Assembly (NCBI RefSeq): GCF_001194135.2
Contig: NC_069000.1
Span: forward strand, 47,819,958-47,865,305
From: Octopus bimaculoides
Lineage: Eukaryota
Reading direction: 5' to 3'
DNA length: 45,348 bases
Each line of letters opens with the position of its first letter. Within the stretch, counting starts at the first letter, position 1. The notes under the pieces are model-generated. The model saw only the letters and a list, made by a program, of their open reading frames with translations, made no database searches and was not told the DNA's origin. Positions 13,532-32,025 of the stretch are shown here, piece after piece. Both the position numbers and the translations under genes were made by a program.

Positions 13532-15549
13532 TTAATTAATTTCTGCCAAGTCTTGAAATTCTGAACTTGCAGGTGAGGGACACATAGGGAATTCTTCAGG
13601 GTCAAGGTAATTGCATTCATTTCCTTGTATAAGGACAGTTACACTGGTGCCACCCACATTGACACCATGGTGACGTAGATGGGCTTTTAAAGAGTTTGAA
13701 TGACGGAAACGTTTGTCACAGTGAGTACATGGATATGGGAAGGAATTTTCATGGATTCGCTTGTGTCGTCGCAGATTTCGGTGGTCACTAAATCTTGCAC
13801 CACAATCAGAACAAGCATGAGGTTTCTCACCGAGGTGTATACGTCTGTGGGATTTCATTGAACCCAAGTGGTTGAAAGTCTGACCACAAAGATCACACAA
13901 GTAACCTTGCATTTGATAACAGCTCTTTATGTGGCTGTGCAGTCCACCAGCCTGAGAAAAAGTACGGCCACATTTATTACAGATGAAACCTTTCACATCA
14001 CTGTGAATGTGACGGTGGTCTGTGAGGTAGGCCAGTTTGGCTGCTTGGAAAGTACACCCTGAAGCATCGCATTTAAATGGACGATTGTCCTGGTGCTCAC
14101 TCTTGTTATGTTCTATGAAATCACGTTGTGTCTGAGAGACTTTATTGCAGTAGCTGCAGGTGTACTGATTCTCTGCTGTATGTACCCGGATGTGGCGAGT
14201 GTAATCACATAAGCGGGCATAATTCATGCCACAAACATGACATTTATGAATTACACCTTGTTCATGCGAATTTAAGTGTTTTAAAAGAGCTTTTTCATCA
14301 GCAAAAGATCTTGGACATTTAGGACACTGTACAGCTCGTCGCTTGCGTCGATATCCTCCATCAAATGTGTCTGCTGAGACAATTCCTATTTCATCCAAAT
14401 CGATCTCGACACTGTTTTTTGGGACTTTCTGTGGACGGGCAGCTTTGCGCTTTGGTAAAGGCAGTGAGTCTTCGTAACAAGCCACTTTCTTACCTTTAAC
14501 CTGACTCCCATCTTTATTCACATAAATAACATCTCGGTAAATCTTTTTGCGATCCTGAAGACAAGCATCAGTTTTTGACGGCCTTAGTTTCACTTTCATC
14601 AGTGAATTTTTTTTCCCACTGTCTTTACTGCTGTTGCTGCTGCTGTTGGAATCATTACTGCTTGAAAGGTGTTGAAGGGACGGCAACGGATGCAGAACAG
14701 TCTCAGCTTGTTTCTTTGTTTTGGCAAGGATAGAAAAAACCTTGGAATTCTGGCCATATTCCACACTTGATTGCTGCAGGTAATTACTTAGGGTTGGGAA
14801 TTTGTAATTTCTCGATTCGTTTGAAGAGCCAGACTCTGTTGCAAAGGATAGATTACTAACACTGGAAGCAGATCCAGAATTATTGGAGTCTGCAGAGAAA
14901 GCAGAGTTGCAATCTAGACTTGGTGACGATGAAGATGATACAACATTCTCCTGGTGCAGTCCCATGATTACCCAAAGATAGTTGTTGATATAATCGGAAA
15001 GAGAGAGAGACGAATTGTTGTTATAATTGGAGGAATTTTGTGTTGAAATCTTTGCAACTTTAGCCTTGCTTGGTGCTTCGGCTTCTGAGTTCTTTGAAGA
15101 TGAATTTGGTAATGGAACTGAAGATGGGAAAGAAAATGAGTGTGATGATAATAATTCTGATGATTTTAGATAGTCTTCACAGACGATACTGATTTCTTTG
15201 ACCCCCAGATGATGGGAAAGCTCTTGAAGTTCTGAAACCAGTTTGCGGGGACATTTCAGGATTCCTGTATAAAGGAATCCAACCAAGATTACTGTTGTGT
15301 CATAGGAATAGCCACAGAGATTAATATAATATTTCCCTGACACTTCTTCAAATTTGGCAAGATCAGCAAAATGAGAACAGAAAATGGAAAAGATTGTCGT
15401 ATGAATATAGAGATTGGGATAACCAGCTTCAAACTGAAGAATTAGGTTACAGAATCGATTTTGCCTTTGTTGAAGACACAAGCCATCCCACAACCGCTTG
15501 ATGTATCCTTCGTATTTGTGATAAACCTCTCCACCAAAAGAGGAATTTG
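13532..15549 (-). CDS. Terminal coding exon of a BTB-BTB-zinc finger transcription factor: BTB domain 2, Ser/Asn-rich linker, 8 zinc fingers
   Basis: The 653-aa ORF extends upstream in frame to the acceptor ttttcttctatttcag|CA (exon starts at 15549, phase 1). BTB motifs: YHKYEGYIKRLWDGLCLQQRQNRFCNLILQF and FLYTGILKCPRKLVSELQELSHHLGVKEISIVC. Eight C-x2/4-C...H-x3/4-H/C fingers at about 14326-13667, including an HLGEKPH linker. Basic NLS-like RRKRR. Stop TAA at 13534-13532. Confidence 0.93.
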
Positions 15550-15777
15550 CTGAAATAGAAGAAAAAAATTTATTTTAGAGTAACCAAGATGGCAGAATAA
15601 GAATGGTTCTGTAACAAATAGAAATGAGTCCTTATTCAAGGAGGAGGAATGGTATGTAGTGACATTCATGCCTTTCCTTCAGATATTTATGAATGTCTAA
15701 AGAACAATGGAATCTATTGAGATTTGAAACCAGATCCCAGTGTTTCATGGCATGCTGAGTGCCTGTCTACTTTCAGA

Positions 15778-16505
15778 GGTCAACAATGAAATAATATATA
15801 ACTAGGTCAACACTAAACCCTGCATCTATAACTGGGTCAAGAATGAAGTTAACATTCTTAATTAGGTCAACAATGAAGGCTACATTAATGAATGGATAAA
15901 TATTGAAATCTACATTAATAAGTTAGTTCAAGCCTGAATTAAGTATTCGGCCAACATTAAGTTTGATAGATGCAACTTTGTCAGCATCAAATTTTGAAGC
16001 AAATAAATAATAAACAATAAGTTTATATTAACATCCAAGTTAACACATTTTATACTAATAACTGGGCCAACAGTGTTTATATTAATAACAGAGTCAACTT
16101 TGGAATCTATTTTTATAACTTGATCAATAATGAAGTTAATATTAATAATTGGGTTTACAATGCAGTCTATTTCAATAACTAAGTTAACAGCCATATTTTC
16201 TTTCAGAGCAGTTGGGTCTATAGTGAAATATTAATAAACAGGTCAATGCTTGAGCCTATTTTGAAAACTGGGTCAACACCGAAGTATATATTTATAATTA
16301 GGTCAACATTGCAACCTATTTTAACAAGTAGGTTAACAGTCTAGTTAATATTAATTACTGGGTCAGTAATTGGGGACTGTTTTAATAACATTAACGTCCA
16401 TTTTCAAAAACTAGACCAACAGTTAACACTGTACAATGAAGTAGGCCAACTTTTGTGCCCATTTTGATAACCAAGTCAATAATAAAGTTCATATTAATAA
16501 CTAGA
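15778..16505. repeat. Degenerate 30-bp tandem array (about 24 units), consensus approximately AATAACTRGGTCAACAATGAAGTCTATATT
   Basis: GGTCA/GGTTA anchors sit at exact 30-bp spacing: 15805, 15835, 15865 and 16241, 16271, 16301, 16331, 16361. Confidence 0.8.
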
Positions 16506-16693
16506 TTCTGTCTTATTAAAGATAAAAAAAAGAAAAAACAAAACAAGTAGAGGCTGAAGTACTGTGCCCCAGTCTGGCCAGGGTCTAAAGACTGAAACAT
16601 ATTAACACAATAAAGGAATATGGGATCCTAGATATCATGCACACACACACACACGTATGTGTATGTGTGTGTGTGTGTGCATGAGAGTGTGAT

Positions 16694-16726
<33 letters not shown>

Positions 16727-16739
16727 TGGTCCTACTTAC

Positions 16740-16890
16740 ATTTATTGTTCCTTCCTGTCTCTTTAGTTTTCTTTGAAGTTGTGAGTGGAGAATCTTTATG
16801 AAGAAGCTCAGACTTGAGTGTGGAGAGATTTCTCAATGACTTGGAACTGAGGACGGCTTCAGGGGACACTTCTTGTATGTAGGGCTCTCT
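16740..16890 (-). CDS. Internal 151-nt coding exon (linker between the two BTB domains)
   Basis: Acceptor tttttctcttcccttcctcag|AGA (phase 0) and donor AAT AAA T|gtaagt (phase 1). Open frame REPYIQEVSPEAVLSSKSLRNLSTLKSELLHKDSPLTTSKKTKETGRNNK. Phases match the flanking BTB exons on both sides. Confidence 0.75.
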
Positions 16891-17522
16891 CTGAGGAAGG
16901 GAAGAGAAAAACACAAACATTGATAATAACATCATCATCATCATCACACCCACCACAAACATCACCATCATCACTACATTCAACACTAGTAGTACTGAAT
17001 TCTAGACCTTGAGATTGGAAAGTGAACATTGGCCATACTGCAGCAACACACACACAGATGGTTAACTAGTTCACTTTCCAAAATGTGCTTCCAGTTTTGG
17101 TCCTACAGTTCTGTGCACACAGTGTTTTATTAAAGCCATGATGTGACCAATGCCATATGAAGGAATTGCAGACAGAAACTCTAGGAAGTACAACCCCACT
17201 GCTTCCTGTCACCCCTATTCCTCCTTGAACCACTCAGTTGACCCAAATATAGCCCTCCATGACACACACACACATGTCAGATAACTTCACAAACACACAC
17301 TTTATCCAGCAGTCCCTTATGCATACACCAATGGATAACAGGGACACGCACACTCACCCACATGCATACACACAGATAAAAACATGCAATATTCAGGCAT
17401 AAACACACATAATACACAACAGTGTCACACATACTTTATATGTATAAACATGCACTCACACACGCACGCATGCACACACATGCTACTTGCACAAAGCACA
17501 CATTTGGCTGCTACACACGTTT

Positions 17523-17554
<32 letters not shown>

Positions 17555-17944
17555 CTAATAATCTCACACACTTCCACACACATCACTTCCCTTATATGCA
17601 TATACTTGTTTACTCACATACACACACACACTCCCAGGTCTACACACATGCTCATATAATCTTCATACTTACTATTTTTCTAGATGCATGAAAAAAACTT
17701 CCCAAAAAGTTACAAATTAAGAAATTGTGGTGGGGCCGGGGGAGGGGGGGATGATGAACATTTTGAAAATACAAACAATAACTTCCATTCTGCCAGTAAC
17801 CCAGTTCCATATACATATCAGCTGTGCTGATTTTGCCCATAAGAAAGGAACAAATAATACAATGTGAACTGCTATAAGCTGATGACCTTGCTCTCTTATT
17901 GCAGAATCCTTAGCAGAATAGAAATTCCAGGTATGGAAACAAAA

Positions 17945-18520
17945 GCTGGAATCACAGGTAGATTAACAGATAAATTTGTCTTTGTATGTGGCAGATGTGT
18001 CCTAAGGGTGCACAGGACTTAGATTTTCTCAAATGTCCAGGAGGCTCCCTTGAGGTTGTAGATGATTTCTGTTATCTAGGTGACCAACTTAGCAATGATG
18101 GAGGATGTTCTGGAAGTATCATTTCTAGAATAAGAATTGGATGGAGGAAGTTCAGAGAGCTTTTATCTCTGTTGGCAACAAAAGAACTCTCTCAAATTGA
18201 AAGGTAGACTATATGATACTTGTGTCCGATTGGCTATACTCCATGGTAGTGAGACATAGGCTCTGAATGAAGAAGACATGTGCAGACTGGAGAGAAATGA
18301 AGGTAGCATGCTCTGTTGGATGTGCAACATCAGTGTGCATGTACGACAAAGTGCAAATGTGTTAAGAGAGACAAGTTGGGCAAAAGAGGAATCAAATGCA
18401 GCATGCAAGAGAGAAGACTACGTTGGTTTGCACATGTGATGCGTATGAACGAGGCCAACAGCATAAAGAAGTGCTGATCACTGAAAGTAGATGGTACCCA
18501 CAGAGGAGGGAGACCCTCAC
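17945..18520 (+). mobile_element. RTE-clade LINE 3' ORF fragment (intronic, antisense to the BTB gene)
   Basis: VFVCGRC, SLEVVDDFCYLGDQLS, RIRIGWRKFRELL, LHGSETWAL, RLERNEGSML and ERRLRWFAHVMRM...RGGRP, with frameshifts. Confidence 0.9.
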
Positions 18521-18766
18521 ATAAATAACTTTACCCCCATCACATAAAGAACTTCTCCAAACTTTTCCAGCATTTCTTTATAATGTTTATTGATGTAACC
18601 AGCAGCAATTTCCATAGACTCTTTCCTATTACTTGCAATAAACTCTCTCTGAAAAGGGAGGGTGTCCATGGCTAGAATGTCTTTAATTATATCCAGACTT
18701 CAAGATGTAAAAGTGATCTTTAAACAACAACAACGACAACAACAATAACAAAACAGGAATACTTAC

Positions 18767-19260
18767 ATCACAATCAATTTTTGGTTTCTCCTTGTCAGTG
18801 ATAAAAGCCTTCTGTTCCCGAATCAATTTATTACAGATACTGATCACTTCCTCGAGACCGAGATAACGAGCTAAGCGCTTGAGGTCAAGAAGCAGCTTGC
18901 TGGAGCATTTCACAACTCCTGTATAGAGGAATGTTAGGGCAATGAGGACAGTTTCTTCATCAAAGTCTTTCACATCTAAAACATATTTTGCTGCCTTCTC
19001 ATCAAAGCTGACAATATCAAAAAATTTGAAGCAGAAATTGTCAAAGATGCAAGCATGTGCAACAAGTTGTACCTGCTTCTTCTTTGTGTGTTGCACATTG
19101 GCATTAGTTCCTGTGTGGCACTGCACCAGTAAGAAACAGTGAGTGCCTTCCTCCTGTTGCTCTTGAATATTGCGTTGTACATGGCGGATGTAGTTGTCAT
19201 AGATGTGGAATAAGTCTTCAGAGGAGGAGAGCGGACGTGACACACACAATTCAGCTTCCT
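18767..19260 (-). CDS. Coding exon containing BTB domain 1 of the same gene
   Basis: Acceptor gtttgtttttatttttcag|AG GAA (phase 1) and donor GAT|gtaagt (phase 0); 494 nt, open. BTB motifs: FHIYDNYIRHVQRNIQEQQEEGTHCFLLVQC, LVAHACIF and FLYTGVVKCSSKLLLDLKRLARYLGLEEVISIC. Confidence 0.85.
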
Positions 19261-19299
19261 CTGAAAAATAAAAACAAACATAATTTAAAAAATGATGAT

Positions 19300-19311
19300 G
19301 ATGATAATAAC

Positions 19312-19380
<69 letters not shown>
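19300..19380. repeat. (AAT)n microsatellite just upstream of the BTB1 exon acceptor
   Basis: Directly visible. It explains the poly-Y start of the 234-aa ORF. Confidence 0.95.
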
Positions 19381-19489
19381 GGCACACAGAGCTGTGCTCG
19401 GTAGGGAAGTGAAAGCATGCTATAAAAATAAAACTACATCTCCTTTGTAAGGCTCAGCGTCTTGAAACTGGTCTTCAGTACTTCATCCT

Positions 19490-20408
19490 ATGCATTCCAA
19501 ATGCTCTGATTCTATCAGGACACCTGAATTTATTCAGGAAGTTAAGCAAAACACTGAAGACAATCCAGGAAAATCAATGAGGTCAATTGCAAAAAGATTT
19601 CATGTGTCAGAAAAAGCAATCAGAAATGTTGTGCATGAAGACATCAGATACGAATCTGATGAGGAGAGGTGAATTCATGTCAGAAAAAACAAAAGAAAAC
19701 CGTTTCATCAGATACAAAAGACTTTGGAACAAACTTAAAAATCCATCAGAAGATGGTGTGATTTGGTTTTTCTCAGATGAGAAAAACTTTGACCAGGACC
19801 AGAATAGAATTAATAGAAGAAATGACAGATGGCTACGTGCAGACCCTTCTGAGGTTCCAGGAGTTAGGCTTCCTCACTTTTTTTCACAAAGCTTTAGGGT
19901 GAATTCTGCTGCATATATTGAGGTTCTGGATAAATTTAAGTCTTGGATCAAAAGACTATGCAATGGAAGGCCTTAAGTCTTTCAACAAGATTCTGCACCA
20001 TCACGCAAGAATGGATGGCCGACAATTTGCATGATCACATCACCCCCCCCCAACATTTGGCCTCCTAATTCTCCAGATCTCAGTCCACTGGACTACTATG
20101 TATGGAGCATCATTGAGAAAAATGTCAATGAACACCACCATAGCACCAAAGATTCTTTGAAAGCTGCCATAGTTCAAGTCATGGCCAAAATGGACAAGGA
20201 CCACTTAATCCGAGATTGTAAACGATTTCAACCCCCTGTAGAGGTAGTTATTGATGCTTATGGTGGCTTTATTGAATGAAATTATTAATTTGATAATTTA
20301 GCTTTATGTTTATGCTATTTTTTATAAAGATACATTTTTTTTTCTGTTATTAAATAAGAATTTTTTAAAAACCATAAATCTCTCCTCAGATATCATCCGG
20401 ACCCTGTA
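19490..20408 (+). mobile_element. maT/Bmmar1-like (DD37D-type) transposase relic, 5'-truncated and internally deleted, antisense to the BTB gene
   Basis: Frameshifted fragments NPGKSMRSIAKRFHVSEKAIRNVVHEDIRY, WFFSDEKNFDQDQ, FQQDSAP and WPPNSPDLSPLDYYVW...GGFIE*. Terminus catccggaccctgTA at about 20394-20408. Confidence 0.85.
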
Positions 20409-20659
20409 TACACACACACACACATTCTAGGATGTAGTTTTAATGCAGTTAGTATCCATTACTAAACACCATGTCATTGCATATACAGTTATCCTATTTA
20501 TGTCTACATGTCATCAAAAATGGGGCTCATCTCATTCACATTATAGTCACCCTTTTGATACAAACCAAATGAAATTAGGATATTCTTGGTACATATAACA
20601 TGCAGTGTATATAACAACCAGTGGATTTACCATATCTACTATATGCTGGGCCCTAGCAC

Positions 20660-20678
20660 CTGCAAAAAGAAGAGCCAT
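20660..20678 (-). CDS. Candidate start-codon exon segment (MALLFA) of the BTB-BTB-ZF gene
   Basis: ATG GCT CTT CTT TTT GCA G|gtgcta gives the phase-1 donor needed to join the BTB1 exon, just downstream of the promoter-like island. The donor is weak, so this is speculative. Confidence 0.25.
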
Positions 20679-20804
20679 CAGAAGGTTGGTTTGGTTTGCC
20701 CAACCCTTGTCTCTCTGGTGTGCCAGAAGACTGTAAGGGATTTGTTGGGTATGAGTTAAAGCTATTTATAACAAACTATAGGCTCCCGATGGCTTCAGAA
20801 TTTT

Positions 20805-21020
20805 ACTCTATCACGTGACCTTATTAGGGGCCGTGATTGGTCAGTTTGCGTTCTGGCGGGAACGGTTCGAAGAAGTTGCCGATTCGAATAATGATCAGTC
20901 ACGTGATGACAAGGTTAATGTTTTCCGCTACGTTCGCGTTTGTTTATATTTATATGAGAAGAATGGCGATAGCAGTTTTGTATCTAATGGCGATAGGTAG
21001 TTTTGTATGTAATGGCGATC
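20805..21020. promoter_or_regulatory. CpG-enriched promoter-like island, possibly bidirectional
   Basis: TCACGTGA E-boxes at 20811-20818 and 20899-20906, inverted CCAAT (TGATTGGTC) at about 20834-20842, and three AATGGCGAT YY1-like motifs at 20962, 20986 and 21011. CpG density is well above the surroundings. Confidence 0.55.
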
Positions 21021-21999
21021 GAGGTGTTAGTTTCACTACAAGACCACCAGGAGTGCTGCATCACTTAGGTTTTACTAAGGAGAAGTCTGTTCTGATATAA
21101 AACCGGATATGCAGCGGGGAGACACTAAACATTTAAGAGATCTTTTGTTTGCATTTGAAATCACGATGCTCGCACACTCCTGAGCCTGTGACCCATATTA
21201 CCTTGCCCTGGCTTGTTTCTGCATCATGTCAGGAGGGTGAAGAGGGTCTTTGACGTGTGATGCAAGCCTTATTGAGATTAAAAACTTTAGGTTATGCAAT
21301 CGCCGGTGAAGTAACTATCCAATGCGCAGCCAAGTCGGTTGCCAGCATGGAATCGGTGGACGCAAACCTGGGTTAAGCTTACTGCTGGTGTAGTAGCCTC
21401 TTGCGCAGACATTGATGGCGTTTTGCACGGGCAATGGTCAGTAATGGTCTTCCTTGGTCACTATATTACGAGCGCACACATGCAAACATACATAATTGCT
21501 TGGCTTGCTAGGGTTAACAGCCAAATCTCCCTCACCCTGCTGCTTTACAATAAAAGCACGGACACATTGGATAATGTAGTTCTAGAATATATTATATTAA
21601 AAAAACAAAAGAAAAGAAACAATCGTGTTGGTAACATCTGTAATGTCTTCTTTCATCAAAAGCGTGCTATTTGATATCTGGTTCTTTATAATACGAGAGA
21701 GAGAGAAAAAAAGAGAGCGTGGAAGAGAAGGTAGTTTAGATACAGGGGAGATAATCGACGATTAAGTGAGTTGTTTCCCTTACCCCATTGATAACTAGAC
21801 TGTTTTGAATCTGTCCATTTATTTTGGCAAATTAGTTTTATAAACACCAAAAGTAGAGAATAAAACATTTGTGAAGTAAAGTCTCTGACAAAACCAAAAA
21901 TAATGGCAAAGAAAAATACAAGTTTTCAATAAACAGAATATAATTTAAATACAACTGCTTTGCAAAACACACACACACACACAAATCTGGTACTTATTC

Positions 22000-22185
22000 T
22001 GGGCGTTAACATGCTAGCACTGGTTGTTACAGACACAAAAGACATACACACGAATTACATACAACAGGCTTCTTTCAGTTTCCATCCATCAAATCCATTT
22101 ACAAGTCATTGGTCAACTTAGGTTATAACAGAAGACATTTGCCCAAAGTACCACATAGTGGGACTGAACCCAGGACCACATGGTC
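22000..22185 (-). mobile_element. SINE family B fragment
   Basis: aggcttctttcagtttcc...ttgcccaaagtaccacatagtgggactgaacccaggaccacatgg matches family B. Confidence 0.65.
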
Positions 22186-22289
22186 ATTCCTAATCATAAA
22201 TAAATATTTATGTTTATGTATTTACAAGATTCTATTCATAATTTGTCTTAAAGTATAATATTAAATCATGATCATCATCATCATCATCA

Positions 22290-22450
22290 TCATTTAAGAT
22301 CCGTTTTCCATGCTGGCAAGGGTTGAATGGTTTGACCAGCTGAAGGGCTCTTCAGGCGCCATGTCTCTGTTTTGGCACGGTTTCTATGGGTGGATGCCCT
22401 TCCTAACACCAACCGCTTTACAGAGTGTACTGGGTGCTTTTAGGGCAGCC
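22290..22450 (-). repeat. RTE 3' UTR-type repeat fragment
   Basis: (cat)n ttaagatccgttttccatgc...ggatgcccttcctaacaccaacc, the reverse of the shared tail. Confidence 0.6.
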
Positions 22451-22986
22451 ATGCTTGACAAACCACCAGGAGTCTCAGTCCCCTGTCATGCCCTCTGTGT
22501 GTCTCAATGTCTGTAGATCCTTTCTCTATTAAGATAAAAACACTTTTTTGCAAAAAAAGGTTTCTATATGAAGGGAAACCATGTTAAAACTGGGGCTGCA
22601 TTGATACTAATGGTAATGGCAATATGCAAATTAAGCATTTTCTGTTGAAACTTACATCATTTAAAAGAGTAAAAGGATTCTCTTTCTCTCTATGTAAAAT
22701 TTGAATTGTAATTGATTAAATCTATAGAATTAATTAAAATTTAGCCATCACTATAATTTTGTCTTTTACTCTTTTGGTACCAGCCAAATCGACTTGTCTA
22801 TCCAAAGTCCTTTTTTTTTTTGAAATGATCGAAATAAATATCTTCCACCAAAATTTCATGTTAATTTATGTTCCAAACACCAGATTAATTAATTAACGAC
22901 AAATGATTAAAATTAAGGCAGTGTATTTCAGCAGAAATACGATATGAAAAGTGTCAAAGTAAATGGTGCTACTACTACTACTACTA

Positions 22987-23053
<67 letters not shown>

Positions 23054-24064
23054 CACACACTTACATACACACATACATACATAAACATGCACATGTATAT
23101 TTATTTATACACACACATGCACTCCCCACGCACATATAAAAAATAGATGCAAGCATGGTAAGTTTGTTTGCACATAAATGGTCTGGGTTCAGTGCCACTG
23201 CATGGCACCTTGGTGTGCAATGGCTCCCCCCTCCCTCCCTGTTACAAGTGCAGGGCGAGGATACATGAAAGTGTTGTAAGATTTTTGTGTCCTGAAATGA
23301 TCAAAAATGCTTAGAATGAATGGATCGATTCTAAGCATTGATTATAGATTGAAGAATAACTTGTGGGGGTGATCTTAGATGGATGAGGTTCCTTCATTGG
23401 CCCTTATTGGAGGCTCCCCCTCTATATTTGGTAGAAGAGGAGGGAGAGAGAGAGAGGAGAGGTATGTTGGGGATATAGAGAGGAAAGGCTGTCTCATTTC
23501 TTCTCCCCTCCATCAATTTTTGCCTTTTTTATTCAAGTTTATTTAAGCCTCCCCCCCCCTCACCAACCACTACATCATAACCTTTTCTTATGTCTTATCT
23601 CACACCTCTATGGCAAGTCAAAACAATTATTATCATCATCATCATCAGCTACAAACCTATAAATATTGTATAAAGTGTGAGATGCACAATTTTTATTTAT
23701 TTTTGTATTGTTTGTTGAATAATTATTGAAATGTTCACATCCTCCTGTTTCATTTAAACATAGAGACATGCCGTCTTCCTTTTATGCTGGATTAATCTTC
23801 CAACAAATAAATTCAACACACAAAACACACACACACACACACAATACCATTAACATATTCCACATATACATTATGTTTCAATGTCTAATCTGGAATGAAA
23901 CAATAAAGAGATGTTTTATGACTTTTTATTAAATTGTGTAATTAGCAACTGCAAATAATTAATGAAATGTTAACCTATTTATTTCTGATGAATGTTTGAT
24001 GTGGTGTCCAGTCATATATCAAGAGGATGACTACTTAAAAAAAAAATTAATGAAGGAAGGGACA

Positions 24065-24480
24065 AATTAACTGGCACCTGTGCCATTGACATGTAAATAG
24101 CACCGTTTGAGCATTGGGCCTCACGGAGGCACGGTGGTCAATGCCGGTGGCATGTGAAAAGCACCTTTTGAGTGTTGGGCCTCACAGAGGCAATGACAAA
24201 TGACAAAGACCTTTGGCATTATGTTACGTTTGAGAAGAAAACCCACCAAGTCAAGTGAAATTGCTGTTGTGGCAGATATTGGTGTCATGCAAGTGGCACC
24301 TGTGCCAGTGGCACATAAAAGCACCCATTACAGTCTCAGAGTGGTTGGCATTAGGAAGGGCATCCAGCTATAGTAACCATGCCAAATCACACTGGAGTCT
24401 GGTGCAGCCTTCCAGCCTTGCCAGCCCTGGTCAAACCGTCCAACCCATACCAGCATGGACAACGGACGTTAAATGATGAT
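24065..24480 (+). repeat. RTE-associated 3' UTR-type interspersed repeat with internal ggcacctgtgcca duplications
   Basis: gtggttggcattaggaagggcatccagc...gtccaacccataccagcatgg...ggacgttaaatgatgatgat is shared with 22290-22450, 34090-34145, 40310-40500 and the 3' end of the RTE at 42510-42710. Confidence 0.7.
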
Positions 24481-24639
24481 GATAGTGATAATGATGTATA
24501 TGTATATATGTATGGATGTTTATGTATTTATGTATATGTATGTATATCGTCATCATCATTGTTTAATGTCTATCTTCCATGCACTCATGGGTAGAATGGC
24601 TGACAGGCGCTGGCAAGGTAGAAAAACTACCCTAGCCTA

Positions 24640-26130
24640 CTGAGTAAATATGGTGAATATCAGGAGACGATTGGAACTAGTCCCAATGCCCTCACAAGAT
24701 ATAGGAAAGGAGTTTGGGCAAGATAAATGCTCATACATGACAGTGAAGTGAGGAAAGATTGTCGACCAGTCATCAGAAAACATGAATATCAAGGGCTTGT
24801 GTATCTCCCTGATTTCTAATGATGAAAGCTACAAATAACTCAGAATCGATGAGGATGCTGCATATATTGGTGCTATGACTAAAGCCAGAAATAACAAAGT
24901 GCTTTTGTAGACTCTGGAAAATATCAGAGCTGGCTGCATTTAACAAAACCATATCTCAAAAATTGCTTTTGCAGTGCCAATGCTTGTAACAAGATTTGGG
25001 ATATTGGACTGGACACTTGTTGAGAACAGCAGCCTGCACATCAAAGCTAGAAAGGTACTGACTACCACTGGCGACTTCCACAGCAACAGTGACACCGATA
25101 GTATTTATGTGAGACAAAGTGATAGCAGTAGAGGCATAAGAGCAGTCTGAAAGGCCTTTGAATGTTGCATTGTATCCCTCAGACAACGCCTGTTGAACAA
25201 GGAAGAAGAAGCAAGTGAGTATATTCCATGCATACTCAAAAGTGAGATTAACAACAGGTTTGGAGGAGAACTCCTGAGCAGGTACTCTGAGAATACAACT
25301 GTCTCGTGTGACCCAAAGGAGGCTGGACTGGCCTACTTAAACAGAAGCTTGGGGGAGAAGCATGCATCATAACAGCAAAAAGCAATGCATGGGTACATGT
25401 TCTGTGAGAGGGCAACAGCAGCATTGACAGGAAGAGTAGCCGCTCCTGGACCTGTGATAGAGACATTACATACCACTTAGAAGGATATGCCTTCACTATA
25501 CAGGAACAGGAAATAACTACTAAATACCTGATAAATAAGAGGGACAGGGATACCACCACGCCTCCATGTTGTGATGAAAAATGTTGGCCCTGTTATACTA
25601 ATATGGAAGATATCCCTCACATTATCAGCAGCTGCCCTGAAATGTCTACAAGATACTACCTGTCCCTGACACTATCTGCCGGAAGGGCTGTTCAGAGGTA
25701 TAACATCAAAGGCATGTTAGAACCAACAGCTATTCCACACCTTTAAAAACAAGGAATACTGGTGGAACACCCTGATAAAAACATTAATTCGGTGCAAACA
25801 TAACAGACCTGATATTGTTTTGTGGGAACAAAAGTTCTGCAAGTGTTGTAGAGGTCAGCAGGTGTGAATGTAGAATCCAAAGTCCAGGGAAAAAAAGAGA
25901 ACGTTTATGGCAAATGAATGCAGAACTTACAGCTCTTCTAGCCTGACTATCAATTCTTATGTGTACTGATCATCATAGGTGCCCTGCATTATGTAGTAAG
26001 AAATTTGCATGAAAACCTAGAGATACTCATTTCTATGGAGATCAAAAGAAACTGACGTGGATTCTCCAAATCCAATCTCTGAGTGGCACAATGAAGGTTT
26101 GTAGGACATTCCCCAAATTCTCCATCTGAG
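24640..26130 (+). mobile_element. R4/Dong-like RLE-type non-LTR retrotransposon 3' relic
   Basis: Degraded RT C-terminus (QDIG.EFGQDKC, ESYK.L.IDE, AFNK, FGILDWT), GLGLLKQ, a Cys/His knuckle (EDIPHIISSCP...RYYL), RPDIV endonuclease motif (YWWNTLIKT...CKHNRPDIVLWE), IIIGAL and LQIQSLSGTMKVCRTF. Confidence 0.85.
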
Positions 26131-26474
26131 ATTGTCATGCATTAACAGTTCAACCAACACACCAACTCAACCCTATATTTAAAAACACTGGGAACTCTTT
26201 TGATTTAAAAAGTTTTGTTGCTTTGTTTAGTGGCTGGTTTGAACTCTCTCAAGAACTTAAAACTCAAAGAAAAATGACACACACACACACACTGAGAAGT
26301 CAACAAAAGATAAGATAAATGTGTGTGTGTTGGGGGCAGGGATTACAAATGAAAGCAAAATGTGGGGTTACTCAGTACATTTAGTTGAGTTAATTTATTT
26401 GAAAATGGTCAATGCTGGTACTCAGAGTTTGTGGTATGTAAAATAATTCAGGAGACAGAAACTTGGACTGTAGG

Positions 26475-26750
26475 TATGTACTTATTCTATTGGTGTCGTT
26501 TGCTGAACCTCTAAGTTACAGGGATGTAGACACACCAACATCGATTGTCAAGCGATGGTGGGGGGACAAACACAGACACACAAACACCCACACACACATA
26601 TATATGATGGGCTTCTTTCAGTTTCTGTCTACCAAATTCACTCACAAGGCCATAGTAGAAGATACTTGCCCAAGGTGCCACGCAGTAGGGCTGAACCCAG
26701 AACCATGTGGTTGGAAGCACGCTTCTTACCACACACCCACTCCTGCGCCT
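26475..26750 (-). mobile_element. tRNA-derived SINE, family B copy
   Basis: The reverse strand reads aggcgcaggagtgggtgtgtggtaagaagc...gggttcagccctactgcgtggcaccttgggcaagt...gtagacagaaactgaaagaagcc, with an internal (TG)n and a conserved tail. Confidence 0.85.
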
Positions 26751-26763
26751 GTATGTATATATA

Positions 26764-27674
26764 NNNNNNNNNNNNNNNNNNNNNNNNNNNNNNNNNNNNN
26801 NNNNNNNNNNNNNNNNNNNNNNNNNNNNNNNNNNNNNNNNNNNNNNNNNNNNNNNNNNNNNNNNNNNNNNNNNNNNNNNNNNNNNNNNNNNNNNNNNNNN
26901 NNNNNNNNNNNNNNNNNNNNNNNNNNNNNNNNNNNNNNNNNNNNNNNNNNNNNNNNNNNNNNNNNNNNNNNNNNNNNNNNNNNNNNNNNNNNNNNNNNNN
27001 NNNNNNNNNNNNNNNNNNNNNNNNNNNNNNNNNNNNNNNNNNNNNNNNNNNNNNNNNNNNNNNNNNNNNNNNNNNNNNNNNNNNNNNNNNNNNNNNNNNN
27101 NNNNNNNNNNNNNNNNNNNNNNNNNNNNNNNNNNNNNNNNNNNNNNNNNNNNNNNNNNNNNNNNNNNNNNNNNNNNNNNNNNNNNNNNNNNNNNNNNNNN
27201 NNNNNNNNNNNNNNNNNNNNNNNNNNNNNNNNNNNNNNNNNNNNNNNNNNNNNNNNNNNNNNNNNNNNNNNNNNNNNNNNNNNNNNNNNNNNNNNNNNNN
27301 NNNNNNNNNNNNNNNNNNNNNNNNNNNNNNNNNNNNNNNNNNNNNNNNNNNNNNNNNNNNNNNNNNNNNNNNNNNNNNNNNNNNNNNNNNNNNNNNNNNN
27401 NNNNNNNNNNNNNNNNNNNNNNNNNNNNNNNNNNNNNNNNNNNNNNNNNNNNNNNNNNNNNNNNNNNNNNNNNNNNNNNNNNNNNNNNNNNNNNNNNNNN
27501 NNNNNNNNNNNNNNNNNNNNNNNNNNNNNNNNNNNNNNNNNNNNNNNNNNNNNNNNNNNNNNNNNNNNNNNNNNNNNNNNNNNNNNNNNNNNNNNNNNNN
27601 NNNNNNNNNNNNNNNNNNNNNNNNNNNNNNNNNNNNNNNNNNNNNNNNNNNNNNNNNNNNNNNNNNNNNNNNNN
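26764..27674. other. Assembly gap, the largest of 10 (others: 3515-3607, 5452-5719, 8803-9420, 12833-13008, 29515-30280, 32016-32025, 32314-32422, 34170-34441, 43064-43187)
   Basis: Runs of N, mostly flanked by microsatellites or homopolymers. Confidence 0.99.
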
Positions 27675-27759
27675 TACCACATAGCCACGCCCGAACTCCC
27701 CCATCTCTCTCTCTCTCTATATATATATACTTCAGTTATGGTTCTCCCAGTTATTTTTG

Positions 27760-27795
<36 letters not shown>

Positions 27796-28530
27796 ACATG
27801 TGTTTAGAGATAGATACACTGGAATATTTTCCGTGTGTGTGTGTGGAGGAGGGTGAATGTGTGTATATATGTTGAAAGCTGAGAGGATGGGTGTTAAAAG
27901 TTACGAATGTGTTATGTGTAACACGCATGAAATTTAAAGAGGGAGAGAGAGAGAGTATATTACGCATGTGAGTGTGTTAGTGTGACAGTGTGTGTGTGCG
28001 TGACAACCTGAGAAGCTAGCAGTGAACTAATTCTTTTCAGCAAAGCGTTGTCCAACACACAGCAGCCTCTGCTATAAGTACACACAAACTAGTCCACAAT
28101 AAAAGTACAAAGTCAGAGTGAGGGAGCGGCGGCGTGGAGGTTAGGTGTGCAGTAGTAGTAGTAGTATTTGTAATAGTAGTAGTGAGAGGACACGCGCCAT
28201 AGAAGAAAACGACTGGCTTCTCCTCTATCCACACCCTCCTCCCACTCTCTCATATCTTATACACTTTACCGTTAATCCTCCTCTTCCTCTCTTAATTTCT
28301 CACCTCCTCCCTAAGTCTTCTTTTACTTTCTTCCTCATATCATCTCCGCCCCCTTCCTTACTTTTTGTCTCTCTCTCATTTCCTTCCTTCCCACCTCTCT
28401 CACCCTGCTACTCATCTTCCCCCTCCCCATCTCATAATTAACATTACACAGCTAATGTATTTATATTACACATAAAAGTACACGAAGCCCCTTTGTCAGT
28501 GGAGAAGGAAACAAACTCCTCAAGTCTTAC

Positions 28531-28900
28531 TTGAAAAGCAGCTTTTTTTTATTTTTTTATCAAAGTCATCCGTTCAAGGACGCCGCGCACAGACGAAACA
28601 AGACTTTTTTTAATACATGTTAACAGGGTCTATCGTATATATATATGTGACACACACGATTGCTCCATCTTCGCAGATGATTGCCCTCTCCTTGTGCTTC
28701 CTCGTTGTCAATGGTATTTCCGACTTTCCGTCCATGACTTCTCAGCTGACAGTTCAGTCCCGCCGCAAAGCTACATGCTTTGAAGCATAGGTGACTAATT
28801 CGTAATCGTCACTCATGCAACGCCATAGGACTGTTCAGTAAAGGGAATGACACACGATCAGCTTACGTCACTGGATTAAGAGGGATAAACATTTGTACAA
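28531..28900. promoter_or_regulatory. CpG-enriched promoter or first-exon-like region
   Basis: Locally CpG-rich (GGACGCCGCGCAC, CCCGCCGC). CRE/ATF-like TTACGTCA at 28863-28870. Minus-strand donor CAA|GTAAGA at 28530. Confidence 0.33.
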
Positions 28901-29223
28901 GACTCTCCGACTCTCTGTGTTTAGTCCCTAATGATCGACCAAAACGAGATGACCGGTGATCGCATGAAACAGCAGTTTTTACATCAGTGTCCCCCTCCTA
29001 GAAGGATGCTGTGACAATTGCTAGGGTCCCTCACTTACTGAATGCCCTGACACCAAGGGTATTTCTGCATCTCTGCGCTCAGATGGATTGTCATCACAGA
29101 TGCCAGTTAACCCATGACTGGGGCCCCAGATAGGTGTTGCTATTCCAGGTCAGAGTAGACCTGAGAACATTGGTGGGAAAGAGGTGACTCTATACTCTTC
29201 AAACCCTAGAAATCTTGAACCAA

Positions 29224-29382
29224 GAAATCTTGAGTGTTCAATATAAAGGATTAAATATATAAAGGCGAATACGTATTTTCTATACCTTGTGGTATTTCAT
29301 CATGGCCGGTATGACAGACTGTAACAGACTGTAATATTCGCCTTTATATATTTAATCCTTTATATTGAACACTCAATATTTC
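29224..29382. repeat. Perfect 42-bp inverted repeat (hairpin element)
   Basis: 29230-29271 ttgagtgttcaatataaaggattaaatatataaaggcgaata is the exact reverse complement of 29335-29376. It extends to about 48 bp with one mismatch. Spacer is 63 bp. Confidence 0.8.
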
Positions 29383-30339
29383 ATATATTCAATAAGACAT
29401 ATTCCATATATTCAATAAGACATTCAATACTTCATTTCATTGTACCATCCATTTTTATATTATATATTATATATTCCATATCCCACATTAATTTTACACG
29501 AATATAAATAAAACNNNNNNNNNNNNNNNNNNNNNNNNNNNNNNNNNNNNNNNNNNNNNNNNNNNNNNNNNNNNNNNNNNNNNNNNNNNNNNNNNNNNNN
29601 NNNNNNNNNNNNNNNNNNNNNNNNNNNNNNNNNNNNNNNNNNNNNNNNNNNNNNNNNNNNNNNNNNNNNNNNNNNNNNNNNNNNNNNNNNNNNNNNNNNN
29701 NNNNNNNNNNNNNNNNNNNNNNNNNNNNNNNNNNNNNNNNNNNNNNNNNNNNNNNNNNNNNNNNNNNNNNNNNNNNNNNNNNNNNNNNNNNNNNNNNNNN
29801 NNNNNNNNNNNNNNNNNNNNNNNNNNNNNNNNNNNNNNNNNNNNNNNNNNNNNNNNNNNNNNNNNNNNNNNNNNNNNNNNNNNNNNNNNNNNNNNNNNNN
29901 NNNNNNNNNNNNNNNNNNNNNNNNNNNNNNNNNNNNNNNNNNNNNNNNNNNNNNNNNNNNNNNNNNNNNNNNNNNNNNNNNNNNNNNNNNNNNNNNNNNN
30001 NNNNNNNNNNNNNNNNNNNNNNNNNNNNNNNNNNNNNNNNNNNNNNNNNNNNNNNNNNNNNNNNNNNNNNNNNNNNNNNNNNNNNNNNNNNNNNNNNNNN
30101 NNNNNNNNNNNNNNNNNNNNNNNNNNNNNNNNNNNNNNNNNNNNNNNNNNNNNNNNNNNNNNNNNNNNNNNNNNNNNNNNNNNNNNNNNNNNNNNNNNNN
30201 NNNNNNNNNNNNNNNNNNNNNNNNNNNNNNNNNNNNNNNNNNNNNNNNNNNNNNNNNNNNNNNNNNNNNNNNNNNNNNNNTATATATATATATATGCATC
30301 TCATTTTAACAAGTATGTTTACCAAAATTACATAAAAAT

Positions 30340-31946: not shown

Positions 31947-31967
31947 ATACACACACACACACACACC

Positions 31968-32015
<48 letters not shown>

Positions 32016-32025
32016 NNNNNNNNNN

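What the first reader, a model, noticed from the sequence alone, without database searches (positions are those of the whole stretch)
13532..19260. Spliced gene encoding a tandem BTB-BTB-zinc finger protein
Seen: the ORF track shows two separate BTB ORFs, but three GT-AG exons (19260-18767, 16890-16740, 15549-13532) join in frame (phases 1/0, 0/1, 1/stop; junctions KIDCD|REPY and RNNK-S|NSSF). They give about 887 aa with two BTB domains, a Ser-rich linker and 8 zinc fingers. The two BTBs align to each other (FLYTGVVKCSSKLLLDLKRLARYLGLEEVISIC vs FLYTGILKCPRKLVSELQELSHHLGVKEISIVC; FHIYDNYI vs YHKYEGYI) and each begins a phase-1 exon. Known: vertebrate ZBTB and insect tramtrack-type factors carry a single N-terminal BTB that dimerises between chains, while tandem BTBs are familiar from RhoBTB, ABTB1 and LZTR1, which lack C2H2 arrays. 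Inference: internal duplication of a BTB exon made a factor that could form an intramolecular BTB pseudo-dimer or bridge two different BTB partners.
Basis: partly seen in the sequence, partly recalled or inferred. Interest (0 to 1): 0.75.

Follow-up and report, generated by a model that had tools for sequence, protein, structure and literature searches.

The report
Octopus transcription factor with two BTB domains
This is a real, spliced Octopus bimaculoides gene for a zinc-finger transcription factor that carries two dimerisation (BTB) domains in a row instead of the usual one. Octopus and cuttlefish share the arrangement, and it is already in public gene models but has not been described in the literature I could search.

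Summary
The three minus-strand exons (19260-18767, 16890-16740, 15549-13532) have AG acceptors with pyrimidine tracts and GTAAGT donors, and they join in frame. They encode BTB1, a 50-aa linker exon, BTB2, a Ser-rich linker and 8 zinc fingers.

The window is 100% identical to Octopus bimaculoides CM046620.1. The joined peptide equals NCBI model XP_052831185.1 ("myoneurin-like", 903 aa). That model adds a 16-codon first exon about 12 kb beyond the window's right end.

Octopus vulgaris and O. sinensis models have the same two BTBs. In the cuttlefish Acanthosepion esculentum, assemblies of 12 sequencing runs each give a 4-4.7 kb spliced contig with one 897-aa ORF of the same architecture. The exon junctions sit at the same positions and phases.

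BTB1 is under strong purifying selection (dN/dS 0.02). Orthologous BTBs are more alike (53-60%) than the two paralogous copies (31-44%), so the duplication predates the octopus-cuttlefish split.

An AlphaFold2 model (pTM 0.64) packs BTB1 against BTB2. Its best PDB matches are the engineered single-chain Miz1-BCL6 and Miz1-NAC1 POZ heterodimers. Intramolecular pairing is therefore plausible but unproven.

No tandem BTB-zinc-finger protein turned up outside cephalopods or in the literature searched. I rate it a new variant of a known kind, of moderate interest.

The parts
19261..45348 (-). Intron 0, only partly inside the window (about 38 kb in all). The ATG-containing exon 0 (ATGGCGACG...AGTGAAG|gtaggt, 49 coding nt, phase 1) lies about 12 kb beyond the window's right end.
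   Evidence: The window maps at 100% identity to L007 (CM046620.1). Exon 0 is at L007 3001-3049, and window base 45348 corresponds to L007 15044. No MATTGC or MASEE match was found in the window.
19304..19379 (-). (TTA)25 microsatellite directly upstream of the BTB1 exon acceptor; it lies in the intron.
   Evidence: Tandem Repeats Finder: period 3, 25.3 copies, 97% matches. Sequence read.
18767..19260 (-). Exon 1 (494 nt), with a phase-1 acceptor and a phase-0 donor. It encodes residues 17-181 of the 903-aa protein.
   Evidence: Flanks are ...TTTTTCAG| and |GTAAGT. Identical to XP_052831185.1. The orthologous exon has the same boundaries in decapodiform genomic contig L008.
18791..19219 (-). 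BTB1 domain (protein residues about 31-173), long form. It has an insertion of about 11 aa between strands beta2 and beta3 relative to BTB2.
   Evidence: Pfam PF00651, 22.9 bits against a 20.5-bit cut-off. In the AF2 model these residues have pLDDT 80-94, with beta1 at 32-35, alpha1 at 37-54 and beta5 at 132-136. dN/dS is 0.022 between two decapodiform species.
16891..18766 (-). Intron 1 (1876 nt). It holds CA/TG microsatellites and reverse-transcriptase-like ORF fragments on the + strand. It also holds the ATGGGG|GTAAAG mini-exon (18535-18540) that the 2015 gene model used as its start.
   Evidence: P0028 begins MG+REPYIQ.
16740..16890 (-). Exon 2 (151 nt = 3n+1), a fast-evolving inter-BTB linker exon (REPYIQ...GRNNK).
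   Evidence: Flanks are ...CCTTCCTCAG| and |GTAAGT. It is present in XP_052831185.1. The cuttlefish counterpart is 142 nt, also 3n+1, and is 26% identical at the protein level.
15550..16739 (-). Intron 2 (1190 nt), with a (TG)n run and degenerate 27-30-bp tandem repeats.
13532..15549 (-). Exon 3 (2018 nt), with a phase-1 acceptor. It encodes BTB2, the Ser-rich linker, 8 zinc fingers and the stop codon TAA (13534-13532).
   Evidence: In cuttlefish the same-species transcript and genomic contig are 100% identical from the acceptor ...ttctttcag| onwards and unrelated upstream of it.
15149..15529 (-). BTB2 domain (protein residues about 239-365), long form.
   Evidence: Pfam PF00651, 32.4 bits. 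AF2 pLDDT 82-92, with beta1 at 239-243, alpha1 at 247-260 and beta5 at 328-331.
14330..15148 (-). Low-complexity linker between BTB2 and the fingers (273 aa, 21.6% Ser). It contains conserved islands such as YIN.YL.VIMGL, KFPTLS.YLQ and RKKIYRDVIYVNKDGSQ.KGKK.ACY.DSLPLPKRKAARPQKVPK.
   Evidence: Composition. Octopus-cuttlefish alignment. dN/dS 0.26.
13667..14326 (-). Array of eight zinc fingers (seven C2H2 and one C2HC), 95% identical between octopus and cuttlefish.
   Evidence: Pfam zf-C2H2 E 4e-25. Motif positions. Conservation and dN/dS 0.004.

Best explanation
Shown:
- The locus is one four-exon gene of Octopus bimaculoides, three of whose exons lie in the window.
- It encodes a 903-aa BTB-BTB-C2H2 zinc-finger protein of the ZBTB/POK type.
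- The two BTB domains arose by an internal tandem duplication of the 5' BTB-coding part of the gene.
- That duplication happened before octopuses and cuttlefish diverged.
- Both copies, the small linker exon between them, and the exon phases have been kept since. BTB1 is under very strong purifying selection.

Inferred:
- The eight-finger array binds DNA.
- The two long-form BTB domains of one chain pack against each other into a single-chain pseudo-heterodimer, the natural counterpart of the engineered tethered Miz1-BCL6 POZ construct.
- The factor would then act as a monomer with one finger array and an asymmetric BTB 'dimer' surface for cofactors, rather than as a symmetric homodimer with two arrays.

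Sub-confidences:
- Gene model and architecture: about 0.97.
- Duplication older than the octopus-cuttlefish split: about 0.9.
- Intramolecular pairing: about 0.45.
For: Gene model:
- Splice signals and frame are as stated.
- The joined peptide is identical to XP_052831185.1. The same architecture appears in O. vulgaris CAI9737303.1 and O. sinensis XP_029647601.1.
- Exon 0 was located in the chromosome record.

Transcript evidence in cuttlefish:
- Assemblies of 12 sequencing runs each give a 4.0-4.7 kb contig with one uninterrupted 897-aa ORF, MASEE-BTB1-linker-BTB2-fingers.
- The contig departs from genomic DNA exactly at |GTAAAC after BTB1 and at ...TTTCAG| before BTB2.
- Its 5' end aligns to Octopus exon 0 up to that exon's donor.
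- The species was identified through ERR12945500, which is Acanthosepion esculentum.

Selection and age:
- dN/dS is 0.022 for BTB1, 0.068 for BTB2, 0.26 for the linker and 0.004 for the fingers.
- Orthologous BTBs are 60% (BTB1) and 53% (BTB2) identical. The two copies are 31-44% identical to each other.

Pairing:
- The AF2 model built on an 11-sequence alignment has pTM 0.64, although 28% of residues are disordered. Both BTBs have pLDDT 80-94, and each has beta1, alpha1 and beta5.
- The top six Foldseek hits in the PDB are 4u2m and 4u2n, single-chain POZ heterodimers. They span both domains (327-333 alignment columns) with TM 0.52-0.61 normalised to the 228-240-residue target chain. A one-domain superposition could give only about 0.35-0.4 on that normalisation (my estimate).
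- In BTB homodimers the N-terminus of one chain lies next to the C-terminus of the other, and fused BTB pairs fold as stable heterodimers (PMC9468604). The roughly 65-residue disordered tether here is more than long enough.
Against: - I saw no Octopus RNA-seq reads directly. For Octopus itself the junctions rest on public gene models and on conservation.
- I did not check the run metadata. That the cuttlefish contigs are mRNA is inferred from their intron-less structure.
- The pairing rests on one AF2 run with a shallow alignment, which included unrelated natural tandem-BTB proteins.
- No PAE or coordinates were available to me. A single-chain prediction cannot weigh trans homodimers, and 4u2m is probably in AF2's training set.
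- The superposition is only approximate (rmsd 7-9 A).
- Both BLASTP and the model leave beta1 of BTB1 weakly supported (pLDDT about 61). That segment is not conserved in cuttlefish (PESPPPAP).
Confidence: 0.5

Rival explanations
1. Same gene and protein, but each BTB homodimerises in trans (BTB1 with BTB1', BTB2 with BTB2'), or BTB1 pairs head-to-tail with BTB2 of another chain. The result would be a doubly clamped dimer or an open-ended polymer that clusters many finger arrays on DNA, in the way SPOP or TTK-type BTB proteins multimerise.
For: - Homodimerisation is the default for ZBTB BTB domains, and heterodimers are rare in cells (PMC9468604).
- Both domains keep the long-form elements needed for a strand-exchanged dimer.
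- At 31-44% identity the two BTBs have diverged enough to have separate specificities.
Against: - AF2 places the two domains together with a high pTM. The best structural matches are single-chain heterodimers.
- A long flexible tether greatly favours the intrachain partner through local concentration (inference).
Confidence: 0.3
2. BTB2 is the canonical dimerisation module and BTB1 is an added adaptor. BTB1 would recruit a different partner, such as another BTB protein, CUL3 or a co-repressor, so that the protein bridges two partners.
For: - BTB1 is the more conserved of the two (60% against 53% identity; dN/dS 0.022 against 0.068), as expected for a surface held by an external partner.
- BTB1 carries a lineage-variable insertion that BTB2 lacks.
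- Both domains lack the Asp35/Arg49 charged pocket typical of BTB-ZF proteins.
Against: - No partner is known.
- Long-form BTB domains are generally obligate dimers that unfold when their interface is unsatisfied (Stogios 2005).
- The AF2 model buries BTB1 against BTB2.
Confidence: 0.12
3. Exons 1 and 2 form an optional in-frame cassette: 645 nt in Octopus and 630 nt in cuttlefish, and both BTB acceptors are phase 1. On this view the main product is an ordinary single-BTB factor (exon 0 spliced to exon 3) and the tandem form is a minor isoform.
For: - Skipping keeps the reading frame in both species.
- The 2015 O. bimaculoides model (A0A0L8FNB7, 724 aa) has only BTB2.
Against: - All 12 full-length cuttlefish contigs carry both BTBs.
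- Exact look-ups of the predicted skip isoforms of three species, and of the intron-retention products of two, found nothing among about 15 billion proteins.
- The 2015 model starts at a 6-nt ATGGGG mini-exon inside intron 1, which is typical of ab initio padding.
- BTB1 is under very strong constraint.
Confidence: 0.05
4. Annotation chimera: BTB1 belongs to a separate or decayed gene, and the joined reading frame is coincidental.
For: - BTB1's Pfam score (22.9 bits) is only just above the 20.5-bit cut-off.
- The O. sinensis model shows that chimeras do occur at this locus. Its N-terminus is a reverse-transcriptase fragment (PF00078).
Against: - Spliced cuttlefish contigs join exon 0, BTB1, the linker exon and BTB2 in one ORF.
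- There is no ATG in the BTB1 exon, exon 2 or the BTB2 region.
- Phases are conserved, and dN/dS on BTB1 is 0.022.
Confidence: 0.02

Closest known systems
ZBTB / POK (BTB-zinc finger) transcription factors, e.g. BCL6, PLZF, Miz1, LRF, myoneurin
   Same: - An N-terminal long-form BTB domain.
- A long low-complexity linker (273 aa, within the 100-375 aa range given by Stogios 2005).
- A C-terminal Kruppel-type C2H2 array.
- A BTB fold that matches LRF, PATZ1 and ZBTB8A structures.
   Different: - Two BTB domains per chain instead of one.
- Both lack the conserved Asp35/Arg-Lys49 charged pocket (F/A in BTB1, N/T in BTB2).
- There is no specific orthology to myoneurin or ZBTB11 despite the database names. 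The myoneurin BTB scores only E 0.11, and the fingers match only generic arrays.
Engineered single-chain POZ heterodimers Miz1-BCL6 (PDB 4U2M) and Miz1-NAC1 (4U2N), Stead & Wright 2014
   Same: - Two different ZBTB-type BTB domains are joined by a flexible tether in one polypeptide.
- They are the best structural matches to the AF2 model, and the match spans both domains.
- They show that such a chain can fold as an intrachain dimer.
   Different: - They are artificial constructs made for crystallography, with a short designed linker and no DNA-binding part.
- Here the tandem is natural, conserved between octopus and cuttlefish, and attached to eight fingers.
- Pairing is predicted here, not observed.
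Natural tandem-BTB proteins: RhoBTB1-3, ABTB1/BPOZ, BTBD8, IBTK, LZTR1, S. pombe Btb3p
   Same: Two BTB domains in one chain. In some of them both BTBs are needed for partner (CUL3) binding.
   Different: - None carries a C2H2 array. They are CUL3 adaptors or signalling proteins, not DNA-binding factors.
- Their BTBs are not close relatives of BTB1 or BTB2. The multi-BTB hits in the representative search lacked zinc fingers.
Mactra antiquata (bivalve) hypothetical protein KAL4227981.1
   Same: It is the nearest mollusc relative outside cephalopods of this BTB subtype found (E 6e-7 to the BTB1+BTB2 profile). It shares the YTGxLKCP motif and has its BTB at the N-terminus.
   Different: It has a single BTB, and Pfam detects no zinc fingers at E <= 1e-4. 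It is only about 30% identical.

Membership tests
BTB/POZ domain (Pfam PF00651) | The sequence matches the family HMM above the curated gathering score, for each of the two domains. | tested here: met
   Octopus BTB1 22.9 bits and BTB2 32.4 bits; cuttlefish BTB1 25.0 bits and BTB2 41.2 bits. The cut-off is 20.5 bits.
BTB/POZ domain (Pfam PF00651) | BTB fold: a three-stranded sheet plus a helical bundle, superposable on solved BTB structures. | tested here: met
   In the AF2 model both domains have pLDDT 80-94. Foldseek probability is 1.00 to KEAP1, LRF, PATZ1, ZBTB8A and NS1-BP BTB domains, with TM 0.67-0.76 normalised to the target. This is a predicted structure, not an experimental one.
ZBTB / POK (BTB-ZF) transcription factors | A long-form BTB (beta1, alpha1 and beta5 present) at or near the N-terminus. 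| tested here: met
   Predicted elements are beta1 32-35, alpha1 37-54 and beta5 132-136 in BTB1, and beta1 239-243, alpha1 247-260 and beta5 328-331 in BTB2. The definition is from Stogios 2005. Beta1 of BTB1 has low confidence.
ZBTB / POK (BTB-ZF) transcription factors | A C-terminal array of Kruppel-type C2H2 fingers, separated from the BTB by a linker of 100-375 residues. | tested here: met
   Eight fingers at residues 640-859, and a 273-aa linker.
ZBTB / POK (BTB-ZF) transcription factors | A single BTB domain per polypeptide. | tested here: not met
   Two BTB domains lie in one ORF. [quoted passage not shown]
ZBTB / POK (BTB-ZF) transcription factors | [quoted passage not shown] | tested here: not met
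   From the alignments to CP190 and Miz1 and of BTB1 to BTB2, BTB2 has N (FCNLIL) and T (IHTTIF), and BTB1 has F (HCFLLV) and A (AHACIF). The PLZF numbering is from Stogios 2005.
Myoneurin (ZBTB31) / ZBTB11 orthologue, as the database names suggest | Specific, reciprocal similarity of the BTB domain and finger array to that vertebrate protein. | tested here: not met
   The myoneurin BTB (2vpk) scores E 0.11. The best BTB hits are weak and mixed (CP190, the Miz1/BCL6 fusion; E about 1e-3). The fingers match ZNF568, PRDM9 and CTCF generically. The three Octopus models carry three different names.
Single-chain (intramolecular) BTB pseudo-dimer | BTB1 and BTB2 of the same chain form the canonical POZ dimer interface. 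| tested here: inconclusive
   pTM is 0.64, and the top hits 4u2m/4u2n span both domains with target-normalised TM 0.52-0.61 but rmsd 7-9 A. No PAE, no coordinates and no multimer comparison were available.
DNA-binding transcription factor | Sequence-specific DNA binding and nuclear localisation. | not testable with these tools
   Inferred only from the C2H2 array and the basic KRKAARPQK / RRKRR stretches.

The most novel reading that the evidence does not exclude
Coleoid cephalopods have kept, since before octopuses and cuttlefish split, a natural single-chain BTB pseudo-heterodimer fused to a zinc-finger array. This would be a monomeric ZBTB factor whose 'dimer' partner is hard-wired in cis. 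It would sidestep homo- versus heterodimer partner choice and dimerisation quality control, and it would present an asymmetric cofactor surface that no homodimeric ZBTB can have.
Probability: 0.4. Interest if true: 0.6.

Novelty: new variant of a known kind. Interest (0 to 1): 0.5.

Why it matters
ZBTB factors are thought of as obligate homodimers. Whether BTB heterodimers have any physiological role is still disputed (PMC9468604). The only solved ZBTB BTB heterodimer structures matched here are artificial fusions.

A naturally fused pair of diverged BTB domains would be an evolutionary experiment that answers part of that question. This pair is conserved under strong purifying selection in two deeply separated cephalopod lineages. 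It would show that a fixed 1:1 BTB pair can be functional, and it offers a ready-made stable 'heterodimer' for structural and cofactor studies.

It also adds a concrete example of domain-architecture change, rather than mere copy-number expansion, among cephalopod zinc-finger genes.

On the practical side, it shows that the current database names for this gene (myoneurin-like, ZBTB11-like, ZFY1) are uninformative. It also shows that the O. sinensis model is fused to a retrotransposon fragment.

Tried and rejected
- Word-indexed protein search, with the joined N-terminus and with a three-species profile. It found nothing, then only one ORF. That index evidently does not cover the NCBI and Logan entries, so I relied on the exhaustive HMMER search.
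I used a BTB1+BTB2 alignment of exact window translations instead.
- Search for the start exon inside the window, by a donor-phase scan and by peptide words. Nothing was found, because the exon lies outside the window.
- AF2 with a 3-sequence alignment gave pLDDT 36 and was unusable.
- A 31-sequence alignment placed every single-BTB sequence on BTB2 and misaligned the cuttlefish sequence. I discarded it and used an 11-sequence alignment that I had checked locally.
- Exact look-ups of hypothetical exon-skipping and intron-retention isoforms were all absent. This is a weak negative.
- The Octopus-like Logan contigs L010 and L011 are collinear with genomic DNA, so they say nothing about splicing.
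- A Pfam scan of the transposase-like and RT-like ORFs in the introns gave no hit at E <= 0.01.
- A PDB sequence search with the finger array gave only generic C2H2 matches and no orthologue.
- I looked for similarity between exon 2 and the post-BTB2 linker, to trace the extent of the duplication. None was found.

Full report
**1. The observation**

| Exon | Coordinates | Length | Upstream flank | Downstream flank |
|---|---|---|---|---|
| 1 | 19260-18767 | 494 nt | ...TGTTTTTATTTTTCAG | GTAAGT |
| 2 | 16890-16740 | 151 nt | ...CTCTTCCCTTCCTCAG | GTAAGT |
| 3 | 15549-13532 | 2018 nt | ...TTCTTCTATTTCAG | ends in TAA |

- Joined, the exons give a single open frame of 887 residues with the junction peptides KIDCD|REPY and RNNK-S-NSSF.
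- Pfam finds a BTB domain in each half above the gathering score (22.9 and 32.4 bits, cut-off 20.5) and a strong C2H2 signal.
- The two BTB halves align at 29% identity with E 7e-24.
- Motif counting gives eight fingers, seven C2H2 and one C2HC. The linker between BTB2 and the fingers is 273 aa and 21.6% serine.
- tblastn finds no further BTB or finger exon in the 45 kb window.
- The BTB1 exon, exon 2 and the BTB2 part of exon 3 contain no in-frame ATG, so an upstream start exon is required.

**2. What the locus is**

An exhaustive HMMER search used a profile of the two BTB exons against 1.84 billion representative proteins. Only four hits had E < 1e-30.

- The best hit, P0001, is 903 aa.
- P0001 is NCBI XP_052831185.1, "myoneurin-like [Octopus bimaculoides]".
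- Its 90% cluster also holds O. vulgaris CAI9737303.1 (900 aa) and O. sinensis XP_029647601.1 (1050 aa), both with two BTBs.
- The same cluster holds the 2015 O. bimaculoides model A0A0L8FNB7 (724 aa), which has only exon 2 and exon 3.

The gene spans 43.9 kb on chromosome CM046620.1 of GCA_001194135.2, and the window is 100% identical to that record.

- Exon 0 reads ATGGCG...AGTGAAG|gtaggt, with 49 coding nt and phase 1. It lies about 12 kb beyond the right end of the window.
- Intron 0 is therefore about 38 kb. This explains why my searches for the start exon inside the window failed.
- The 'MG' start of the 2015 model corresponds to ATGGGG|GTAAAG at 18535-18540 inside intron 1. That looks like ab initio padding, not a real alternative promoter.
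- The N-terminus of the O. sinensis model is a reverse-transcriptase fragment (PF00078), so that model is a chimera with a transposable element.

**3. Transcript-level evidence from a second lineage**

The cluster of the second full-length hit contains P0030 (897 aa). It is found on contigs of 4.0-4.7 kb assembled independently from 12 sequencing runs, SRR29271457-83.

- Each contig carries one uninterrupted ORF: MASEE, BTB1, a 47-aa linker, BTB2, a linker and eight fingers.
- Each also has 5' and 3' untranslated sequence.
- The contigs lack all introns, so I read them as mRNA. I did not check the run metadata.

Comparison with genomic contigs shows splicing directly.

- In a related decapodiform genome (ENA ERZ21867824) the BTB1 exon is flanked by ...TTTCTACAG| and |GTAAAC, and the BTB2 exon by ...TTTCATTTCAG|.
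- In the same species as the transcripts, genomic contig L012 is 100% identical to transcript L001 from the exon 3 acceptor (...ttctttcttctttcag|) onwards for 3326 nt. Upstream of that point the two are unrelated.
- The 5' end of the transcript aligns at 79% over 137 nt to Octopus exon 0 and ends exactly at that exon's donor.
- Both BTB exons open with a phase-1 acceptor, as in Octopus, and the linker exon is 142 nt, again 3n+1.

The species is the golden cuttlefish Acanthosepion esculentum (Sepia esculenta).

- The exon 3 ORF P0031 is 100% identical to P0030 over 682 aa.
- P0031 occurs in run ERR12945500.
- The Sepia officinalis genome preprint names ERR12945500 as A. esculentum short reads (10.1101/2025.04.22.649952).

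It is therefore met in an orthologue. For Octopus itself it is met only at the level of gene models produced under three separate annotations.

**4. Conservation and age**

Octopus and cuttlefish proteins align end to end at 60% identity.

| Region | Octopus vs cuttlefish, aa identity | dN/dS, cuttlefish vs second decapodiform (dS about 0.45) |
|---|---|---|
| BTB1 | 60% | 0.022 |
| Linker exon 2 | 26% | not computed |
| BTB2 | 53% | 0.068 |
| Ser-rich linker | 41% | 0.26 |
| Zinc fingers | 95% | 0.004 |

- Synonymous sites between Octopus and cuttlefish are saturated.
- BTB1 is thus at least as constrained as BTB2 and is not a decaying copy.
- The two paralogous copies are 31-44% identical, less than either orthologous pair. 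The duplication therefore predates the split of Octopodiformes and Decapodiformes. From memory of published estimates, that split is roughly 250-300 million years old.
- Both copies start at a phase-1 acceptor 7-14 residues before helix alpha1. This fits a tandem duplication of the 5' part of an ancestral 'exon 0 + one large exon' gene.
- Exons 1 and 2 together are an in-frame cassette (645 nt in Octopus, 630 nt in cuttlefish), so a single-BTB isoform is possible in principle.
- Exact look-ups of the predicted skip isoforms, and of the intron-retention products, found nothing. That is a weak negative.

**5. Distribution**

- Outside the cephalopod clusters, the best hit to the BTB profile is an emu SLX4-like protein (E 5.7e-14). 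Everything else is at E 1e-9 or weaker.
- Pfam scans of 17 of these hits show MATH-BTB, BTB-BACK-Kelch, LZTR1-like and other multi-BTB proteins without fingers. One is a BTB-ZF protein with a single BTB.
- The nearest mollusc relative found outside cephalopods is a single-BTB protein of the bivalve Mactra antiquata.
- Full-text searches for tandem, double or duplicated BTB domains returned RhoBTB, ABTB1/BPOZ, BTBD8, IBTK, LZTR1 and plant families. They returned no BTB-BTB-zinc-finger protein.
- The S. officinalis genome preprint does not mention BTB at all.
- Representatives are clustered at 50% identity, so other cephalopods may be hidden inside the two clusters. I could not survey Nautilus.

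**6. How it probably works**

The C2H2 array, its extreme conservation and the basic stretches before it indicate a DNA-binding factor. This is an inference from family knowledge. The open question is what two BTBs do.

AF2 with three sequences failed (pLDDT 36). An 11-sequence alignment gave mean pLDDT 69 and pTM 0.64.

- Both BTBs have pLDDT 80-94.
- Each shows beta1, alpha1 and beta5. These are the long-form elements that Stogios et al. 2005 associate with the strand-exchanged dimer.
- The 174-237 tether is disordered.
- With 28% of residues disordered, a pTM of 0.64 can hardly be reached unless the relative position of the two domains is predicted with confidence (my inference).

In a Foldseek search of the PDB, the six best matches are all chains of 4U2M and 4U2N. 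These are the engineered single-chain Miz1-BCL6 and Miz1-NAC1 POZ heterodimers.

- The alignments span both domains (327-333 columns).
- TM is 0.52-0.61 normalised to the 228-240-residue target chain. Superposing only one domain would give about 0.35-0.4 (my estimate).
- The query-normalised TM is 0.37-0.44, against 0.25-0.27 for single-domain hits.
- The fit is approximate (rmsd 7-9 A).

In BTB dimers the N-terminus of one chain lies beside the C-terminus of the other, and fused pairs fold as stable heterodimers (PMC9468604). A 65-residue tether is therefore permissive.

I favour an intrachain pseudo-heterodimer at about 0.45. The rivals are:
- trans homodimerisation or polymerisation, 0.3;
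- BTB1 as a separate partner-recruiting module, 0.12;
- a mostly skipped cassette, 0.05;
- an annotation artefact, 0.02.

Limits on the pairing evidence:
- It rests on one shallow-alignment run, and that alignment included unrelated natural tandem-BTB proteins.
- I had no PAE or coordinates, and no multimer comparison.
- 4U2M is probably in the training data.

**7. Comparison with known families**

- The protein works like, and is best filed with, ZBTB/POK factors. It has a long-form N-terminal BTB, a long low-complexity linker and a C-terminal Kruppel-type array.
- It fails two features of that family. It has two BTBs per chain, and both lack the Asp35/Arg-Lys49 charged pocket.
- It is not a specific orthologue of myoneurin, ZBTB11 or ZFY.
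- It shares only the count of BTB domains with RhoBTB, ABTB1 and LZTR1.

**8. Verdict**

- The gene is already in public annotation. The tandem BTB-ZF architecture, its conservation between octopus and cuttlefish, and its likely single-chain pairing are not described in the literature I could search.
- It is a new variant of a known kind, with interest about 0.5.

Noticed in passing
L007 2914-3049 (Octopus exon 0, outside the window) and L001 604-737: The 5' leader and exon 0 are 79% identical over 137 nt between octopus and cuttlefish, although synonymous sites are saturated elsewhere. The stretch includes CACGTGA and CCAATCG motifs. The first ATG of the Octopus model is ATAG in cuttlefish, so the conserved start is probably the second ATG (MASEE, Met13 of XP_052831185.1).
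   Followed up: partly
window 19304-19379: A (TTA)25 microsatellite sits about 40 nt upstream of the BTB1 exon acceptor. Length variation there could affect branch-point or polypyrimidine function.
   Followed up: no
window 18535-18540 (minus strand, intron 1): The sequence ATGGGG|GTAAAG matches the 'MG' start of the 2015 single-BTB gene model A0A0L8FNB7. It is probably an ab initio mini-exon, but an internal promoter giving a BTB2-only protein is not excluded.
   Followed up: partly
window 19490-20279 (+) and 30508-30864 (-), in intron 0: These ORF fragments look by eye like Tc1/mariner transposase C-termini (e.g. PPNSPDLSPLDYYVWS, SPNSLDCNPLDYY). Pfam gave no hit at E <= 0.01, so this remains unverified.
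   Followed up: partly
window 17986-18477 (+), in intron 1; P0027 residues 1-166: There are RT-like ORF fragments on the opposite strand in intron 1; Pfam gave no hit for them. Separately, the O. sinensis model XP_029647601.1 begins with a genuine RVT_1 fragment (PF00078, 34.7 bits) fused to BTB1, which makes it an annotation chimera.
   Followed up: partly
window 3515-3607, 5452-5719, 8803-9420, 12833-13008, 26764-27674, 29515-30280, 32016-32025, 32314-32422, 34170-34441, 43064-43187: There are ten runs of N (assembly gaps), all flanked by TA/CA microsatellites. The gap at 12833-13008 lies about 520 nt downstream of the stop codon and may interrupt the 3' UTR.
   Followed up: no
window 15780-16500 (intron 2): A degenerate array of 27-30-bp units (TRF rows at 15797-15886 and 16020-16098) fills much of intron 2. 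The related Octopus-like contig L010 aligns through this region at 89% identity.
   Followed up: no
P0005 (XP_064376611.1, Dromaius novaehollandiae): This 3997-aa emu protein has five near-identical BTB repeats and a C-terminal SLX4 domain. It is either a tandemly expanded SLX4/BTBD12 or an assembly or annotation artefact.
   Followed up: no
P0001 residues about 407-428, 481-490 and 565-609 (window about 14420-15025): Short islands inside the otherwise fast-evolving Ser-rich linker are invariant between octopus and cuttlefish (YIN.YL.VIMGL; KFPTLS.YLQ; RKKIYRDVIYVNKDGSQ.KGKK.ACY.DSLPLPKRKAARPQKVPK). They are candidate cofactor-binding or nuclear-localisation motifs.
   Followed up: no
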